Part shown: positions 28,496 through 42,578 of the stretch, one piece after another
Numbering within the stretch: the first letter of the stretch is position 1
Layout: each line of letters opens with the position of its first letter
Program-made: the position numbers and the translations under genes
Notes under the pieces: model-generated
Told to the model about the DNA's origin: nothing
Databases searched by the model: none
Seen by the model: the letters and a program-made list of their open reading frames with translations, nothing else
Assembly: GCA_033442325.1 (NCBI GenBank)
Contig: JAWQFM010000003.1
Location: 1,718,226-1,782,225, forward strand
From: Salpingoeca rosetta
Lineage: Eukaryota > Protista > Choanoflagellata
Length of the DNA: 64,000 nucleotides
Direction: 5' to 3'

Positions 28496-28550
<55 letters not shown>

Positions 28551-28645
28551 AACAAAGCGCATGAAGGAGCGAACAAGGGAGTAAAGTGGCATGTGCTGTG
28601 GGTTCTACTTGCTGCTGCTGGCGGTGGCGATGGTGGCAGTGGTGC

Positions 28646-31600
28646 TCACGCCTGCGCGGTTGCATCGCCAGTGCCAATGAGCATCTCATCATCGCTGTCC
28701 ATCAAGTCGTCGTTGATGTTCGTGTTGGTGAGCTGGCTGAAGCTGACGGTGGACCGGCTACGGAAGCACGGCACGTACCCGCTCACCCTGCACGCAGCAG
28801 ACATGGTGGTGTGAAGGTGAGGTGGTTGGCAGTGAGACGCCGAATGGAAAGGATGACGGGAATGGGAGAAGGAGAGCGGGCGAAGGGCAGGGAGAAGGGG
28901 CAGGATACGCACACACGTGTGAGCTGGGGATGGCGTGTCAGTCAAAGCGCAAGTGAGGCAAGGGCATCACGCATGCAGTGGCATGAGCACATAAGCACGA
29001 GCCGCACCTCTCGCGAAGGGAAGGCGACTTGTACAGGATGACGGTGATGAAGATGACGAGGAACGCAATCACGACAACCACACTGACAACGGCCATGCTC
29101 GTGTCGGCACCAGGGTTCGACTGCACATCACACACGAGCACACAAACGAAGCGGAACGGGGCAAAACGAGATGGGATGAGCATTTATGGCGGAAACAGCC
29201 ATTCGTGTGACCCACACACACACACACACACCCACACACACACACCCACACACACACACACGCATGCACACGTGATGGGAGCAGGAACACAGTGTGTGCG
29301 TGTGTGCGATCATGCGTGGGGGCAAGGAGCAACAGGAAGCGGTGAACAATGAAACGTACGCATTCCACGGAAGTTGTCTGCTGGTACGTCTCCTCTTCGC
29401 CGCCACTGCACACGTCGCCCACGACTTTGGCGTAGTTGCGCACATCCTCAAACTCCTTGCGGCCCTGAGGGATTGACAGATGCATGTACACGTGTGTTGG
29501 TGTGTTGGCGGTGGTGAGAGGGGGCGAGGTCTTGCTGGGGTACCACATCAAGAGCATTGCATCAGGCGTGTCCGAGTAATTGTGACTGTGTCACGACGAA
29601 ATCAGCGCTACCCAGCAGTGAGAGACGACAGAAAGGAGACGAAAGGAGACGAAAAGAAAGGAAAGAGAGAGCGGCTTGCGCAATGGAATCTCCACCACAA
29701 GTGCAGACAGCAAACACACCGAGCATGCAATCTCCTTCTTGTACGCCTTGTCGTATTCGCACGGGCTGGTCGCGGAAAGGTCTGACTTGCGCGTGAATCC
29801 CGGGGCGCTGAAGCGCGAGGAAAGGAGAAGGGCACGGTGTATGTGAGTGTGTATGTGAATGTGTATGTGAGTGGGAATTTGAGTGTGTGTGTATGCGTGT
29901 TCTTGCGTATGCTTGGACGATTGTGAAACGCATGCAAAGAAAAAATGGAGGCTGCTACATGGTCAATTTGAGTAATGTGCGCACAACTCTGTCAGATAAC
30001 ACACGGCTGTGAGTGTGAAAGGCAGACGTGTAGTATGAGCAATGCGATGATATGGGTTCTCCCTCACCAGGCAAAGTCTGCTGCGGTGCACTTGCAGATT
30101 GTTGTTCCCTGGTCCTCCGCTGCCTCGTATTTCGGCTCGTGGTCGAGGCCGTTGAAGCAGCTGGCGGGCAGGGCAAACAAGGAGAAAAGGAAGGGGAAGT
30201 TTGGCAAAGGGGGTATGAGAGGATCAGTGATAAGGCACAGTCGTGGTGATGGTGGAAGGTGTTGTTGGTGTTGTGGCGGCGGTTTGAGGAAATGGGAGAC
30301 ACGGGAGACGCAGAGGTATGGGTTGCTGTCATTGGCAATCACGCATGAACCACGACCACAGCTGGCAAAGCGAACATGTTTGTATGCACACGTACATCCT
30401 GCAAGCGATGCGGCGAAGGAACTTGTGCTGTTGCCCAAGCAGGCAGCGCTGGTCACTGCCGCTGCTGACGGGAACACCCGGTGAGAAGATCTCGTAGTCT
30501 GCGTTGGCGGTGCCAAGATACGCCGTGCTGCCTGTGGTGGGTGGGAACACGTGTCACACACACACACACACATACACACACACAAACACACATACACACA
30601 CACAAACACACACACACACACGTGTCACACACACACATGTGTTGTGGTGTTGTGCGTGAGGAAGCGTGTGAAAAGGTGGTGTTTTTGCGCTTTGAATGCA
30701 ACACAAAGCCGCACAGCTGCCTGATCCCACACCACACTCGCGCCAAACCATCAACATCATCGCCAACAGATGCGTACGCAGCAGGTGCGTACATGGGCGG
30801 CCGAGGAGCGGCTCAAAGTCGACGGCAGCACCCCGCCACTCAATGTCGTAGTAGTACGCATACACGACGAGCGTGCCCCCGCCCGTCTCAGCCGTCATCT
30901 GCAAGATTGCTGTGGGTAACAGGTAGTGGTGGTGCGATGGTGATGTGAGAGGTTGGGGTCTGGTGGGACAGGAAGGGAAGACTCATGCATGCGTGTGCGT
31001 GTGCGTGTGCGTGTGTGTGTGTGGTGGATGCTGGAGGGTGACGCCAAAAAGGACATACTGTCTTCGCGGGCAATCTTCTTCGTCTCCCAGTCCGTGGTGC
31101 CGCGATCAACAGAGTACCTGACCAAGCCATCGCACATGCGTGAGATCACCAAGTGACGTGGCATTGGCAAGAAAGCCACGCCCTACACACAAGTACGTAT
31201 GTGTGCGTGTGCTAGAATGTGCGTACAGGATCGAGTCTGTGGTCTGGAAGTAAGGAACGGCAACAAGCACGCCGCCGTGGTCGAGGATCTGGTACTCGTG
31301 GGGCGTTTCCGCAGCCTGATAACCCGTGCATGCAAGCAAACCAGGATCGAAACGGATGAGGTGAGATGACAACGCAGAACGCTGTGAGCGCATGCACGTG
31401 TGAGCACATGTGTGTGTATGTGTGTGTGAGACAGTCTGCAATTTCATGTGCGTGCGGATGTTTGTATGCGTCTGCGGGGGGGGGGGGTGTACAGACTCAC
31501 GAGGGACCAGGTGAGGCCACCATCGGACGAAAGGTAGAGGTTCGCTTCTGAAGATGCAAAAGTCATGCTCTCCCCGGCAAACCTGGAGGCACGCAAGGGA

Positions 31601-31709
31601 GGCAAGGCGGGGGGGGGGGGGTTACGCATATGCATGTCGTGTTGTGAGCGGCAAGAAGGACCGAACGTAGGCCGAGAGAGATGTATGAGTGGCAAGCTCG
31701 CAAAACATA

Positions 31710-31792
<83 letters not shown>

Positions 31793-32047
31793 TCATTCGT
31801 CTCCTTGTACCCGTTAGCGAGAATGATGCCTGAGGCGGTTGGTGTCGACATGGGGAGTGGGAGATCCATGATGGCACGAGCGGCATCGAGCGCAATGTGC
31901 AGCTGGCACGCGGCCTCATCATCGTCCTCGCACCTGCACAGGCGACAGCCGTTGAGGTGGTGAGCGAGAGCACCATGGCTGTGTCTGGGTGCAGAGTCCA
32001 TTCTACCCTACGCCCTTCCCCTCAGAGCACACACACAAACACACACA

Positions 32048-32086
<39 letters not shown>

Positions 32087-33628
32087 TCTCTCTCTCTCTC
32101 TCACCCTGCACCACCTCACCCCCCCCTCCTAAATCTGCCTTGCATGACGAACCGAGCGCCGTGTGGCGGCGGGATGTGGGACCACGACGCGCCCTTGTTG
32201 AATGTGATGACCGTCTCCATCCGGTCGTTCTTCAGCCACGTCGCAAGATACGTGCCGGGCTGGCTCGCTACCTTGTGCACGTCAGCAACCTGCACACGGT
32301 GTGGGGCGGCGGTGGATGGGTTTGGGTGAGAAGTGGGAAGCAAGCGTTGCATCGTCGTGGTATAGTGGTGCGAACAGGAGCTGAGGCTGAACTTGGTGTG
32401 ATGAGTGAGGAAGTGAATGTGAAACAGTGTGGCACATCACATGTGCGCGTGCTCTTGGCAACAGACCTCGGTGCCTGTGCTGGAGAAGTAAGGGAGGTAG
32501 GCTACATCTTGCAGGGAGAGAGTAAAGTCAATACCACTCGCGTCCTGGCATCAACACACGAGCAACAGAATGAGGTTGTGGTGATTGATTGTGGTGACTG
32601 TTTGCTGTGATTGCTGTTGGAAGTTAGGGCAGGAAGGGCTGTTAAAGCCTCCCCCCCCCTCCGGGGGAGAAATGACCGTCGCGCAACGTGCAACCGCATC
32701 ATCCATCAAGCACTTTGGGCAACATCCACAACGATCGGATCGTACGGAGACAAAGAGGTTGCTCGTTTGCATAATCTCTTGCTCCTGGATGTTGTCTTCG
32801 ATCAGCGAAGCGATAATGTCAACCCCGTTCTTGTCTGTCATGGAAACGCAAGGCACGCGCACACAGTGTGAGCAGGAAGTGGGGCAGCAGGGGGCACAGC
32901 TGAGCTGTTAACCATTCCTGGTGCGTATGCGTGCACCCGCAACGGTCAATCGCATCCACTGCACTCAAAAGGCAAGTGGCCTCGACGACGACGACGACGA
33001 TGACAACAACTAGCAGATACAGCAAACACACACACACAGAACACAACACACACAACACACACACACACACACAACACACGCACACTCGCCATTCCAGTAA
33101 TCAGGCAAGTCGTCCATACCGAATGTGTCTTCGAGCGTGGCGCCTGTCGACTTCTGCACCATGAACGCGGGGATGTCCAACTCAAGACCCTCCTCTCCCG
33201 CCATCCGGAAGTCGAGTGTGTCTGCATCGTTCACAATCACAATCCCGATCGCGCCAGCTGCTTGCGCATTCAGCGTCTGCACACGGATGTGTGTCGGTTT
33301 ATGAGTGTGCGGGGTGGTGCGTGAGTGAGTGAGTGAGTGAGTGAGTGAGTGAGTGAGTGAGTGAGTGAGTGAGTGAGTGAGTGAGTGAGTGAGTGAGTGA
33401 GTGAGTGAGTGAGTGAGTGAGTGAGTGAGTGTGCAGGCTGGTGGGTGAGTAGATGAGTGAAGCAACCTCAAGGAGTGCATGCACATGTGCCCCAGACCGC
33501 CCTTTCATCCCAGCACCACGCGATGGGCAAGCACGTCGCACCTTCTCTGTGAATTTGCACTCGCCGCGCTGCACAACAGCAATGCGGCCCTTGGCTTCAG
33601 GACTCACGCCTCCACGGTCAGAGCACCC

Positions 33629-33680
<52 letters not shown>

Positions 33681-33954
33681 GAAGAAGAAGATGATGATGA
33701 AGAAGAAGAAGAAGAAGATGATGATGATGATGGTCAGGGAATGGCGAAGCGCCGTTTTAAGCAAGACATTGCACGCTGCAAACCCGCAAGAAGCATGCTG
33801 TACCAAGTGGGTTCTGCTTCTCAATGAAGAGGGTGCCTGACAGCACGTTGCCGGTGAGTGCTGGGGTGAACAGCCCCTTTGTTGCGCTGAAATTCCCCGC
33901 AATCTCTGGCGGCGAGTCAACTCGGAACACAAACGTGTCGCCTGATAACGCGCG

Positions 33955-34025
<71 letters not shown>

Positions 34026-35384
34026 CAAAAGCGATGCAAAGCCATCGGCAATGAGCAGAACCGCACGTTCCACTGCTCCAACAGGAGGAACCACCACAGC
34101 GCAGCGCAGCACATCACACCTTCAGTGCGGGTGAGGGTGTGCTGGACGAGCGCAAAGACAACGCCCTCCGTCGCATCGACAATCTTGAAGTGGTTGTGCC
34201 GCGCATCAAAGGGGAACACAGCGGCCGTGAATGTGTCGCCGTTGTCCTTGGACACAAACAGCCGGCGCTCGTCAAACCCATCGCTCGACGGGACCTCCGT
34301 GGCGAACAGGAACTCGGCAGCCTGGCAGCATTGGGTGGCAATGGGAGATGAAGGGGGGGGTGTGGAAAGGAGGAGGGGTTGGTCAGTGCAGGGAAGGAAT
34401 GACAAGGCAAAGCACGGCGTGGTCTGGTGGGAAGACCGCGACTGCTGTCTTGATCGCAATTTACGCACACAGATGGAACAGACACCGGTACAGCCACGCA
34501 CAGGCGGAGATACGCACGAATACACACAGACACAGACACACAGACACACAGACACACACAGACACAGACACACACAGACGCATAGGCAGACACTCACACA
34601 CCTGTTCAAAGTCGTAGCAGTTCTTCCTGAGCATGGATGTCTTTGCATCCCGCGTGCCCGGACGGTGCATGCGGACGAGGTCGAGTGGAACCACCTCGCC
34701 CGGCTCGGCACGATACACCGTCATCAGCACATCATCGTCGTTCTGGTGCACACACACACATGGGGTTGGCATGGCAGGGAATTGGATGGGAAGGGGAGGG
34801 AACACGGGTGTTGAAGGGACAGCAAATGTGACACGGACATGAGTGAGCAGAAGAAGAAACGAAAGAGGAGAGAATGGCGGAAAACGGCAGCAACAAGAAG
34901 AACAAGAAGAGTGAGAAGAGAAGAAAAACGAGAAGAACAAGAGCAACAACACGCACAAGAGCAAGACCAACAACAGCAAGAAGAAGAAGAACAACAACAA
35001 CAACAGCAGCAGCAGCATGCATGCATTCATTCCTCATCAATCAACAACAGCTCACCCCCGCTGCATTTTCCTGTGCCCAGTCGGCATAGAAGACGTGCTC
35101 GCTGATGCGCAGCAGCTGCGCCTGCTCGCTGCCGTATTCAGACAGGTGGTACAGGTCGTCCACCTCGTAGTCCGAGTGGTCCTGTGTAGGCATGCGCAGG
35201 CGTGAGCGGCATGCGACGGAAGGAAACGCAGTCAAAGGGCAGGCAGGCCGCCGGATAGACAGGCAGACAGAATTCAGGAAGACACAAAACGAGAGACACA
35301 AACGCGGGCACGCACACGTGCACATAGACACGGACACACACGCAAAACGACACGCAGGGCACACATATGTGCGCGCGCGCGCAC

Positions 35385-35437
<53 letters not shown>

Positions 35438-35881
35438 GCTCCTGCTCGCCTCTCTCCTCAACTGACGTCATCTGGGACGAATCCGAGCATCTCGTGTGCG
35501 TTTGTCGGGTTTGGCAAGATGCGGTGCATGTGCATGTCAAGCGGTTTAAACGTGAACGTGCGCCCGTTATCCGTGGACAGGTAGAAGCCAGCGGACTTGC
35601 GGTAGTCGTCTTTGGAGAAGTACTGCGACTCGCTCGGCGACGGCAACGCATACACCTGATGCAGCATCGAACGCATGCACGTGTGGATTTATCAGTGGGT
35701 TGGATGTGTCAGTGGATGACACGTGAGTGTGCGCACATAACAGCAGCCAGGCGAAGAAGAGCATGAACCCGCCAGTGAAGCATGGACGTGTGTGTGTGTG
35801 TGCGTGTGTGTGTGTGCGTGTGTGTGCGTGTGTGTGGGATGTGCGTGCGATGTGTGTGTGCGTGTGTGGGATGTGCGTGCG

Positions 35882-35958
<77 letters not shown>

Positions 35959-36994
35959 GTGTGTGCGTGTACAGATGCACGTGCGCGGGGTGTGTGCGAC
36001 CAACCCAGATTGCGTCAAGGGTCTCGACGCGGTGGAGCTCGACGACGGGCCACTTGATGCCCGGGCAGAGGGTGTAGTTGCGGCCATAGTCGCTGCTACA
36101 GTACACGTTCGGCTCCTGCCGCTGCAACTCACGCGTCACCAGCGCCACAATCTCCTAAACACGCATGCAGAAACAGTGAACAAGCAGCGGGACGCATGTT
36201 AGCAGTGAGAATTCAAGCTGGAAAGCAAGTTGGCAAGCAAGTTAGCAAGCAAGCTAGGCAAAACAACACACACCCAGATACCCTGCATCGCAACTGCGGT
36301 CGAAGACTTACGCCGCGGGGTTGGCCGACCCACAGGAAGGAAATCTCGGTTGCGTCGCTGGGGAAGCTGTGCGTTGCCACGCTGATCTTGCTGGCATCCA
36401 ACGCCACGTCGTCGGACTTTGACCCGCACCGGTCATCGCTGGCAGCGGCACGGCGCTGACGGCGTTGTGGTTGCTCGTTTTGCGCAGAGCGCTGCTGTGC
36501 ACCCGTGGGCACGCTGGCAGTGCGGCGCGCATCGATAGCGGTGTCGCCCGTGAGCAGATTGCGTTTGTGGGAGAACAGGCTGGCGTGGACATCGTCAGAT
36601 GTGACTCCTTGTGGCTTGTCCGCAAGGGAGGTCACCTGGTCGTACACTGGCTCGTGACGGCTGCAAGCGGCCAACATACGCAAGTGCATGGTGTGCATGT
36701 GAGTGTGTATATGTGTATGTGTGCGGGTATGTGTGCATGTGAGTGTATTTCATAAGGACTCGTGCATGGCCATGAAGTCGTATGACACACAACAACATCC
36801 CACACTGGCGGGGATTCGCATCACGCATGTAGAGGAGTGGTTGACGACGACAACGTTGCTGCTCACCGTTTCAAGGAAGCAAGGCGTTGATGTGAGGAAG
36901 TTGTGGGTGCAGTTGCAGCTGCGAATCCACACGACACAGCCAAAAGCACTGCTGCCAGGACAACTGCAGCAACGCTGCGCGGACTGTTGCTCAT
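28646..36994 (-). CDS. Vps10p/sortilin-family sorting receptor with an inserted PA domain, about 20 exons
   Basis: Signal [25 protein letters not shown]; propeptide ending RRQRR|AAA; Asp-box repeats ([40 protein letters not shown]); [11 protein letters not shown]; 10CC module ([28 protein letters not shown]); [22 protein letters not shown]; tail FSQL...DSDDEMLI. Confidence 0.92.
33321..33430. repeat. (TGAG)n microsatellite in a Vps10 intron
   Basis: Read directly from the sequence. Confidence 0.95.
33630..33732. repeat. (GAT)n/(GAA)n compound tract in a Vps10 intron
   Basis: Read directly; it abuts the acceptor of a PA-domain exon. Confidence 0.9.

Positions 36995-37601: not shown

Positions 37602-42578
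<4,977 letters not shown>

What the first reader, a model, noticed from the sequence alone, without database searches (positions are those of the whole stretch)
32750..33941. Sortilin/Vps10 receptor with a PA domain spliced into its beta-propeller
Seen: in-frame exons between Vps10 blades ([17 protein letters not shown] ... QTSNLFVS) encode [15 protein letters not shown]...[45 protein letters not shown]...[13 protein letters not shown], a typical protease-associated (PA) domain. Established: animal and fungal Vps10/sortilins have no PA domain, while plant VSR/BP-80 and RMR receptors use PA domains to bind vacuolar cargo. Inference: one receptor carries both lysosomal cargo-recognition modules and may represent an undescribed sorting system. 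It keeps the sortilin propeptide/furin site and a DxxLL-like tail.
Basis: partly seen in the sequence, partly recalled or inferred. Interest (0 to 1): 0.8.

Follow-up and report, generated by a model that had tools for sequence, protein, structure and literature searches.

The report
Choanoflagellate sortilin with inserted PA domain
This is a real, expressed gene of the choanoflagellate Salpingoeca rosetta for a sortilin/Vps10-type sorting receptor with a protease-associated (PA) domain inserted into one blade of its propeller; the design is shared by all choanoflagellate relatives found and visible in databases, but I found no paper on it.

Summary
Observation confirmed. A 24-exon gene on the minus strand (ATG 36994, stop 28646) encodes a 1038-aa protein. 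My model is identical to NCBI 'hypothetical protein PTSG_02537 [Salpingoeca rosetta]'.

The protein has a signal peptide, a propeptide with a furin-like RRQRR site, a Vps10 propeller, a 10CC module, one TM helix and an acidic DSDDEMLI tail.

- **Insert:** 160 residues (421-580, exons 7-11) replace a 9-residue hairpin of human sortilin in blade 6. They form a PA domain (Pfam E 1.6e-17).
- **Closest solved fold:** the plant VSR1 cargo-binding PA domain (Z 19.9).
- **RNA evidence:** stranded RNA-seq and transcript contigs confirm the exon 9>10 and 10>11 junctions and 12 of the 13 downstream junctions directly. Junctions 7>8 and 8>9 rest on the frame, the NCBI model and colinear orthologue mRNAs.
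- **Distribution:** every relative scanned (21) has the PA at the same place. All named ones are choanoflagellates of both orders; unnamed ones nest among them.

So this is a lineage-wide sortilin variant, not a one-off. Public databases already annotate both domains; no paper describing it was found.

A VSR-like cargo-binding role for the PA is plausible but untested. Bacterial peptidase PA domains score as high as VSR1, and the RGxCxF loop also occurs in peptidase PA domains. Novelty: new variant of a known kind. Interest: moderate.

The parts
28646..36994 (-). Coding region of the gene (24 exons, 1038 codons plus stop) = PTSG_02537 of Salpingoeca rosetta. Exons (high-low): 36994-36867, 36660-36312, 36154-36005, 35655-35467, 35181-35056, 34742-34602, 34321-34120, 33941-33804, 33627-33542, 33276-33120, 32834-32746, 32544-32467, 32289-32153, 31933-31811, 31582-31501, 31315-31227, 31117-31059, 30909-30793, 30531-30396, 30160-30068, 29807-29720, 29464-29360, 29120-29008, 28787-28646 (3' UTR down to about 28588).
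   Evidence: Gene model. Identical to P0042. Exon 10 and downstream: junctions from RNA reads and contigs, one inferred at a CA repeat.
36914..36994 (-). Signal peptide (about residues 1-27)
   Evidence: Hydrophobic stretch 4-30; inferred.
36450..36464 (-). Furin-like propeptide site RRQRR (residues 109-113)
   Evidence: Aligns with human sortilin RWRR before SAPG..CG; coordinates. Cleavage not tested.
34120..34321 (-). Exon 7: Vps10 blade 5 Asp-box and blade 6 strands 1-2. Holds R380 (34265-34267), the equivalent of human sortilin R292.
   Evidence: Pfam Vps10 positions 186-235; aligned to sortilin chains; column conservation.
33804..33941 (-). Exon 8: ascending stalk strand and N-terminal strands of the PA domain (residues 429-475)
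   Evidence: Frame and GT..AG. Colinear with orthologue mRNAs. Aligned to VSR1 PA residues 10-60 by profile.
33542..33627 (-). Exon 9: PA core with Cys476 and the RGECKF loop (33551-33568)
   Evidence: Pfam PA positions 21-42. Its 3' end is read in the loose ends of RNA reads at exon 10. R495, C498 and F500 are invariant in 16 relatives.
33120..33276 (-). Exon 10: PA core, helix NAQAAGA, strand IVIVN, Met528, IPAFMV
   Evidence: Pfam PA positions 44-95, E 7e-8. Joints to exons 9 and 11 in RNA.
32746..32834 (-). Exon 11: end of the PA, descending stalk strand, re-entry into blade 6 strand 3 (SNLFVS)
   Evidence: RNA joints 33120>32834 and 32746>32544. Human sortilin alignment resumes at residue 581.
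32761..34144 (-). Genomic span of the 160-residue insert (residues 421-580) relative to human sortilin
   Evidence: Two-domain phmmer alignment to sortilin chains: query 109-420 and 581-943 against chain 41-332 and 342-695; coordinates.
29028..29099 (-). Transmembrane helix (residues 962-985)
   Evidence: Hydropathy; helix 964-985 in the model.
28676..28699 (-). Cytosolic acidic-cluster dileucine-like motif DSDDEMLI (residues 1022-1029)
   Evidence: Sequence. L1028 is invariant and an acidic run is conserved in the family consensus.

Best explanation
The gene encodes a type I membrane sorting receptor of the sortilin/Vps10 family.

Shown:
- Domain order is signal peptide, propeptide ending in a furin-like RRQRR, ten-bladed Vps10 propeller, 10CC module, one TM helix, and a short tail with an acidic dileucine-like motif.
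- A complete PA domain of about 150 residues is inserted into the hairpin between strands 2 and 3 of blade 6. In the model it sits on those two lengthened strands (417-428 and 572-585).
- By my recollection of the sortilin-neurotensin structure, blade 6 is the blade whose strand 1 binds peptide C-termini in the tunnel. The Arg equivalent to human R292 is kept here (R380).
- The insert is constitutive in the mRNA and conserved in position and length (150-187 residues) in all choanoflagellate relatives found.

Inferred:
- The receptor cycles between the Golgi and the endolysosomal or food-vacuole system, like sortilin and Vps10p.
- The PA domain acts as a second ligand-binding module next to the tunnel site. 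It most likely grips peptide termini or exposed strands with its RGxCxF loop (R495) and the Met528 strand, as the VSR1 PA domain does, and so widens or changes the cargo range.
For: Gene structure and expression.

Family membership:
- Pfam Vps10 E 1.9e-64, Sortilin_C E 5e-22, PA E 1.6e-17.
- The model matches sortilin and SorLA ectodomains with TM 0.75-0.83 by target.

Insertion point:
- 160 residues stand in for 9 of human sortilin.
- The model shows lengthened strands 417-428 and 572-585 flanking the PA.

Conservation:
- 21 of 21 relatives scanned have the PA at the same Vps10 profile position, about 225-240.
- C476, R495, C498, F500, K503 and M528 are invariant.
- The R292 equivalent is R or K in 12 of 16, the F281 equivalent is F in 14 of 16, and the I294 equivalent is always L.

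PA resemblance:
- The PA-only model matches the VSR1 PA with Z 19.9, rmsd 2.1 A over 143 residues.
- The family profile's best PDB match is VSR1, E 4.5e-17, aligning R495, C498, F500 and M528 with VSR1 R95, C98, F100 and M128.
- In VSR1, R95 binds the cargo's C-terminal carboxylate and residues 127-129 pair with the cargo strand (PMC8740768).

Tail: DSDDEMLI resembles the sortilin and M6PR acidic dileucine signals (own knowledge).
Against: - No functional data exist for this protein or any relative.
- The RGxCxF loop and the disulphide pair also occur in bacterial peptidase PA domains, which score as high as VSR1 with the family profile. Their conservation therefore does not single out cargo binding.
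- VSR1 residues that give specificity (Y99, D129, E133) are not conserved.
- The tunnel Arg is replaced in 4 of 16 relatives.
- I could not read the model's coordinates or predicted errors. Where the PA sits relative to the tunnel mouth and the 10CC module is therefore unknown.
- Parts of the insert are less confident (10-residue blocks of pLDDT 68-78 at 421-430, 451-460, 521-540 and 571-580).
- Junctions 7>8 and 8>9 were not covered by reads.
Confidence: 0.55

Rival explanations
1. The PA domain is not a cargo site. It is a lid, gate or oligomerisation module that regulates access to the propeller tunnel or the pH-dependent dimerisation of the receptor. PA inserts in subtilases, M28 aminopeptidases and the transferrin receptor/PSMA family likewise shape substrate access or partner binding.
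For: - PA domains are typically inserted domains in host proteins. The model with its two stalk strands aligns end to end (residues 1-176) with the PA inserts of M28 aminopeptidases, TfR and GCPII.
- Bacterial peptidase PA domains are at least as close in sequence as VSR1.
- The insertion is in the blade that forms the tunnel's peptide site (plus own knowledge of PDB 3F6K).
Against: - The best structural and profile match among solved structures is a true cargo-binding PA.
- The VSR1 contact residues R95 and M128 are invariant in the family, although they are also common elsewhere.
- No geometry was available to show that the PA can reach the tunnel mouth.
Confidence: 0.28
2. The receptor works mainly at the cell surface or the phagocytic cup of this bacterivore. 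It would act as an endocytic or prey-recognition receptor, with the PA domain binding extracellular or bacterial ligands, rather than as a Golgi-to-lysosome sorter.
For: - Sortilin-family receptors also act at the surface (own knowledge).
- The family consensus carries a YSxL-type endocytosis motif, which is FSQL in S. rosetta.
- Choanoflagellates feed on bacteria.
Against: - The propeptide with a furin site and the acidic dileucine tail are the hallmarks of Golgi-endosome cycling in sortilin.
- No localisation data exist.
Confidence: 0.12
3. The PA exons belong to a nested or alternative transcript, or the fusion is a gene-model artefact.
Against: - Reads and contigs join exons 9>10>11 and onward.
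- A 3240-nt transcript contig leaves 1515 nt upstream of exon 10, against 1509 nt predicted to the ATG.
- No antisense signal or internal starts were seen.
- Transcriptome-derived orthologues from seven other species are colinear across both junctions.
- A second species' genomic contig has the same order of parts.
Confidence: 0.02

Closest known systems
Human sortilin (SORT1) / yeast Vps10p, the Vps10-domain sorting receptors
   Same: - Signal peptide and a propeptide with a furin site at the aligned place.
- Ten-bladed propeller (Pfam PF15902; fold TM 0.75-0.83 by target) and a 10CC module with ten conserved Cys.
- One TM helix and a short tail with an acidic dileucine-like signal.
- Tunnel residues equivalent to F281, R292 and I294 are kept.
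   Different: - A 160-residue stretch holding a PA domain replaces the 9-residue hairpin between strands 2 and 3 of blade 6.
- The propeptide region is longer.
- The Y318 equivalent is Lys.
- No function has been tested.
Plant vacuolar sorting receptor VSR1 (BP-80 family), PA domain (PDB 4TJX, 7F2I)
   Same: - Closest solved PA by fold (Z 19.9, rmsd 2.1 A over 143 residues) and by profile (E 4.5e-17) across nearly the whole domain.
- Shares the RGxCxF loop, the disulphide pair and the Met of switch III (PMC8740768).
   Different: - No VSR central domain, EGF repeats or YMPL-type tail.
- The PA is internal to another receptor fold rather than N-terminal.
- Y99, D129 and E133 are not conserved.
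- Only 24-26% identity.
- Bacterial PA domains score as high, so no specific kinship is shown.
PA domains inserted into peptidases and their relatives (M28 aminopeptidases such as BSAP/YwaD, M36 metallopeptidases, subtilases such as C5a peptidase, transferrin receptor/PSMA apical domain)
   Same: - The PA sits as a domain inserted into a loop of a host domain, carried on two connecting strands.
- Structural alignments cover the stalk as well (Z 13-18).
- Sequence scores of 52-83 bits with the family profile.
   Different: The host here is a non-catalytic Vps10 propeller. No other host of this kind was met in the PDB or among the Atlas clusters returned.
PA-TM-RING proteins (plant RMR, animal GRAIL/RNF128, RNF13, ZNRF3/RNF43)
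   Same: A lumenal or extracellular PA domain on a single-pass membrane protein of the endosomal system. Fold match Z 16.3 for GRAIL and about 13 for ZNRF3/RNF43.
   Different: No RING domain, and the PA is not N-terminal. Sequence match is weaker (RNF128 E 1e-6).

Membership tests
Sortilin/Vps10-domain receptor family | Ten-bladed Vps10 beta-propeller | tested here: met
   Pfam PF15902 E 1.9e-64 in two stretches. The model matches sortilin and SorLA ectodomains with TM 0.75-0.83 by target. Five Asp-box motifs found by pattern.
Sortilin/Vps10-domain receptor family | 10CC module with ten conserved cysteines after the propeller | tested here: met
   Pfam PF15901 E 5e-22 at 802-954. C814, 843, 860, 881, 883, 890, 906, 938 and 954 are invariant and C918 nearly so in 16 relatives.
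Sortilin/Vps10-domain receptor family | N-terminal propeptide removed at a furin site | tested here: inconclusive
   RRQRR (109-113) aligns with human RWRR and the following Cys. Cleavage itself is not testable here.
Sortilin/Vps10-domain receptor family | Type I topology with a short cytosolic tail carrying an acidic dileucine sorting signal | tested here: met
   TM 962-985; 53-residue tail with DSDDEMLI; L1028 invariant. Adaptor binding not testable.
Sortilin/Vps10-domain receptor family | Peptide C-terminus site in the tunnel (human F281, S283, R292, I294, Y318; recalled from the neurotensin complex, PDB 3F6K) | tested here: inconclusive
   The equivalents are F367, T369, R380, L382 and K407. 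The Arg is R or K in 12 of 16 relatives. Binding not tested.
PA (protease-associated) domain, Pfam PF02225 | Sequence profile above the curated cut-off, and the PA fold | tested here: met
   63.9 bits against a cut-off of 23.9. PA-only model pLDDT 85; Z 19.9 to the VSR1 PA and Z 13-18 to many other PA domains.
Plant VSR (BP-80) receptors | N-terminal PA, then the VSR central domain, EGF repeats, TM helix and a YMPL-type tail | tested here: not met
   Pfam finds only PA, Vps10, Sortilin_C and BNR. The PA is internal. Not a VSR.
RMR / PA-TM-RING proteins | PA, TM helix and a cytosolic RING-H2 domain | tested here: not met
   No RING in Pfam. The tail is 53 residues with one Cys.

The most novel reading that the evidence does not exclude
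The ancestor of all choanoflagellates built a two-site lysosomal or food-vacuole cargo receptor. It did so by planting a VSR-like, C-terminus-gripping PA domain directly beside the sortilin tunnel site on blade 6. One receptor would then read two peptide signals, or clamp one cargo between two sites. [quoted passage not shown]
Probability: 0.3. Interest if true: 0.65.

Novelty: new variant of a known kind. Interest (0 to 1): 0.45.

Why it matters
**Two modules in one chain.** Sortilin/Vps10 receptors and PA-domain receptors (VSR, RMR) are usually treated as separate answers to the same problem: recognising soluble cargo for the lysosome or vacuole. Here the two modules are fused in one polypeptide, at a fixed place next to the sortilin peptide site. 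That design has been kept across the choanoflagellates sampled, in both orders.

**A testable case.** It offers a natural experiment on how cargo range is widened in a phagotroph that depends on digestive vacuoles. S. rosetta is now genetically tractable.

**Evolutionary reach.** It also bears on what the trafficking toolkit of the animal ancestor looked like. If outgroups of animals and choanoflagellates also carry the insert, animals lost it. If not, it is a choanoflagellate invention.

**Limits.** Its value is limited by three things: the protein is already in databases with both domains annotated, PA domains are promiscuous inserts, and no function is shown.

Tried and rejected
- **Read laying over the whole gene:** I did not probe the rule.
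- **Single-exon searches:**
  - Exon 10 alone found nothing in the PDB.
  - Exon 8, exon 11 and exon 3 alone found no Pfam family.
- **Word-indexed homologue search:** with the full-length H. balthica protein and with the 16-sequence profile it returned only 5-6 proteins. It identified PTSG_02537 but is too insensitive to map the architecture across eukaryotes.
- **Atlas searches by features and by shape:** only PA-less sortilins and Vps10-less PA proteins came back. That is no proof of absence, because only clusters of 50 or more members are searched.
- **Specific descent of the PA from plant VSR:** considered and set aside, because bacterial PA domains score equally or higher. The opposite idea, domain transfer from bacteria, cannot be tested without a balanced PA tree. 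The gene is not among the S. rosetta HGT candidates of PMC7971027.
- **Exon-shuffling cassette:** not supported by the present structure, because the introns flanking exons 8-11 have different phases (1 and 0).
- **Spliced protein as a query:** I did not type it into any tool. It became usable only once P0042 was found.

Full report
**What is in the sequence**

The region 28.5-37 kb holds one intron-rich gene on the minus strand. Reading the open stretches and pairing GT donors with AG acceptors in frame gives 24 exons and 23 GT..AG introns of 109-349 nt. The open frame has 1038 codons, from the ATG at 36994 to the stop at 28648-28646.

- [17 protein letters not shown] ends exon 7 (34321-34120).
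- [15 protein letters not shown] lies in exon 8 (33941-33804).
- CSDRGG...RGECKFTEK is exon 9 (33627-33542).
- [17 protein letters not shown]...[11 protein letters not shown] is exon 10 (33276-33120).
- QTSNLFVS ends exon 11 (32834-32746).

Scanned exon by exon, exon 9 matches Pfam PA positions 21-42 and exon 10 positions 44-95. The two exons therefore continue one another in the profile across a 265-nt intron. Exon 7 matches Sortilin-Vps10 positions 186-235. This is far beyond chance.

**Identity of the gene**

A phmmer search of exon 7 against 1.84 billion representatives gave 29 hits. A follow-up search with the best full-length hit returned P0042, 'hypothetical protein PTSG_02537 [Salpingoeca rosetta]'. 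UniRef calls it 'VPS10 domain-containing protein', and it lies on a 2.24-Mb contig.

My spliced translation is identical to P0042 over all 1038 residues. The window is therefore S. rosetta, a choanoflagellate. The gene is already annotated, with precomputed Pfam PF02225, PF02012, PF15902 and PF15901.

**Transcript evidence**

I laid 28500-33316 with two stranded RNA-seq runs and two transcript-contig runs. The results were:
- The joint 33120>32834 (exon 10>11) is seen in 18 and 43 reads and in both contigs.
- Twelve of the 13 downstream joints are seen directly, at GT..AG positions. The joint 31811>31582 was dropped by the tool at a CA repeat and is placed from contig piece lengths and GT..AG.
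- At the 5' edge of exon 10, 19+11 reads and both contigs run on into letters that are the reverse complement of the 3' end of exon 9. That proves the 9>10 junction.
- One contig is 3240 nt long and leaves 1515 nt upstream of exon 10. The model predicts 1509 nt to the ATG.
- Reads lie almost only in the orientation expected for a minus-strand RNA, and no internal start is seen.

Junctions 7>8 and 8>9 rest on four things: the frame, GT..AG, identity with the NCBI model, and orthologue mRNAs from other species that read straight through both junctions.

**Architecture**

On the full protein, Pfam gives Vps10 (E 1.9e-64, two stretches, resuming at 572 at profile position 232), PA (469-551, E 1.6e-17) and Sortilin_C (802-954, E 5e-22).

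Other features:
- a signal peptide;
- RRQRR at 109-113;
- five Asp-box motifs;
- a TM helix at 962-985;
- a 53-residue tail ending in ...[22 protein letters not shown].

Against human sortilin chains the match falls into two pieces. Residues 109-420 align to chain 41-332, and residues 581-943 align to chain 342-695. So 160 residues (421-580) stand where human sortilin has the 9-residue hairpin DEPGDTGFG. The RRQRR site aligns with the human furin site RWRR.

**Model**

The AlphaFold2 model built on 16 relatives has pLDDT mostly 85-93 over the ectodomain and pTM 0.68. The strands before and after the insert are lengthened (417-428 and 572-585), so the PA sits on a two-stranded stalk.

Foldseek matches the model to SorLA and sortilin ectodomains with TM 0.75-0.83 by target. 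For the insert, the best match is the VSR1 PA domain.

**Where the insert sits**

The Asp-box lies in the turn after the descending stalk strand. By the usual placement of Asp-boxes between strands 3 and 4 (recalled), the insert is therefore in the strand 2-3 hairpin of the blade whose strand 1 is HFKIVD.

This equals human QFYSIL, which I recall as strand 1 of blade 6, the strand that pairs with neurotensin in PDB 3F6K. The recalled contact residues F281, S283, R292, I294 and Y318 fall exactly on those letters at chain positions 281-318 in the alignment, which supports the recollection.

Their equivalents here are F367, T369, R380, L382 and K407. In 16 relatives the Arg is R or K in 12, the Phe is kept in 14 and the Leu in all.

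I could not read the model's coordinates. Which face of the propeller the PA covers, and whether it reaches the tunnel, is not known.

**The PA domain itself**

A model of residues 415-590 alone has pLDDT 85. Its best structural matches are:

| Match | Z |
|---|---|
| Arabidopsis VSR1 PA domain (4TJX; rmsd 2.1 A over 143 residues, 24% identity) | 19.9 |
| M28 aminopeptidases | 17.6-17.9 |
| GRAIL | 16.3 |
| TfR, GCPII, C5a peptidase, ZNRF3/RNF43 | 13-15 |

The family profile (A2) also ranks VSR1 first in the PDB (E 4.5e-17), over almost the whole domain. It aligns R495, C498, F500 and M528 with VSR1 R95, C98, F100 and M128.

In VSR1, R95 of the RGxCxF loop holds the cargo's C-terminal carboxylate, and residues 127-129 pair with the cargo strand (PMC8740768). 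R495, C498, F500, M528 and C476 are invariant in the family.

Two results caution against reading this as kinship or shared function:
- The nearest PA domains outside the family in the large database are bacterial (M36 and other peptidases, 34-38% identity).
- With the same profile they score 52-83 bits over the full domain, against 65 for VSR1, and they carry the same RGtCxF loop.

**Distribution**

All 21 relatives that I scanned have the PA at the same place in the Vps10 profile.

The named ones are all choanoflagellates:
- Hartaetosiga balthica (two paralogues) and H. gracilis;
- Salpingoeca infusionum and S. urceolata;
- Barroeca monosierra;
- the loricate Diaphanoeca grandis and Bicosta minor.

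Further points:
- In maximum-likelihood trees rooted with a fish sortilin, the unnamed metagenome and Logan proteins nest among these.
- A 12.9-kb genomic contig from SRR27444530 carries the same gene with one intron inside the PA, next to an SH2-domain gene. It groups with the acanthoecid-like clade.
- The insert is 150-187 residues in all 16 aligned members.
- No Atlas cluster of 50 or more members returned by the feature or shape searches combines the two families. The neighbours are PA-less sortilins of chordates, cnidarians, apicomplexans, fungi and green algae, or bacterial PA peptidases.

The simplest reading is that the insert was present in the last common ancestor of living choanoflagellates. 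Whether it is older could not be tested: the sensitive search was limited to one 67-residue exon, and the word-indexed searches were insensitive.

**Literature**

Full-text searches found no paper that describes a Vps10 receptor with a PA domain. I combined Vps10, sortilin, PA domain, protease-associated, choanoflagellate names and the locus tag. The gene is not in the supplementary HGT lists for S. rosetta.

**Interpretation**

*Shown:* this is a bona fide, expressed sortilin-family receptor with a constitutive PA insert in blade 6, conserved across choanoflagellates.

*Inferred:*
- It cycles between the Golgi and endolysosomes or food vacuoles, given the propeptide/furin site and the acidic dileucine-like tail.
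- The PA adds a second peptide-binding surface beside the tunnel site.

*Main rival:* the PA is a lid or oligomerisation element, as in PA-bearing peptidases. The data do not separate these two readings.

*Nested-transcript or artefact reading:* effectively excluded.

**Verdict**

It is a new variant of a known kind, already visible in databases but not described in the papers searched. Interest is moderate.

Noticed in passing
window 33317-33431, 33629-33732, 35788-35970 and most other introns of the gene: Long microsatellites fill the introns: (GTGA)29 between PA exons 9 and 10, (TGA)35 between exons 8 and 9, about 90 GT units in intron 3, and CA/GT runs in many others. They block read laying and give long spurious ORFs rich in His-Thr or Cys-Val.
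   Followed up: partly
window 38878-39560 (+ strand): A neighbouring gene in divergent orientation encodes a family-2 glycosyltransferase. Its exon pieces (VIIPFHNEA..., [22 protein letters not shown]) match Pfam Glycos_transf_2 positions 1-24 and 58-86. By recollection it looks like a polypeptide GalNAc-transferase. The ATGs lie about 1.9 kb apart.
   Followed up: partly
L001:5718-8676 (Logan contig of SRR27444530): A genomic copy of the same PA-in-Vps10 receptor in another, unnamed, gene-dense genome. It has a single AT-rich intron inside the PA domain after ...THLLYMQ. Its neighbours are SH2, Tim17, prenyltransferase and ATP-synthase delta/epsilon genes.
   Followed up: partly
P0001 and P0044 (Hartaetosiga balthica): This species has two paralogues of the receptor, and both carry the PA insert. 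H. gracilis groups with the second one.
   Followed up: no
window 28588: Many RNA molecules begin or end here in both raw-read runs (11 and 9). This fits a poly(A) site about 58 nt after the stop codon at 28646.
   Followed up: no
window 30878 and 32754: Minor alternative letters in RNA reads: C>A in 4 of 38 reads of X21, and A>C in 5 of 40 reads of X22. They are most likely strain differences or errors.
   Followed up: no
P0050-P0063 (bacterial proteins): The closest PA domains outside the choanoflagellate family in the word-indexed search are bacterial, in M36 metallopeptidases and other secreted proteins. They share 34-38% identity and the same RGtCxF loop. This is a lead for the origin of the insert, and it is untested.
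   Followed up: partly
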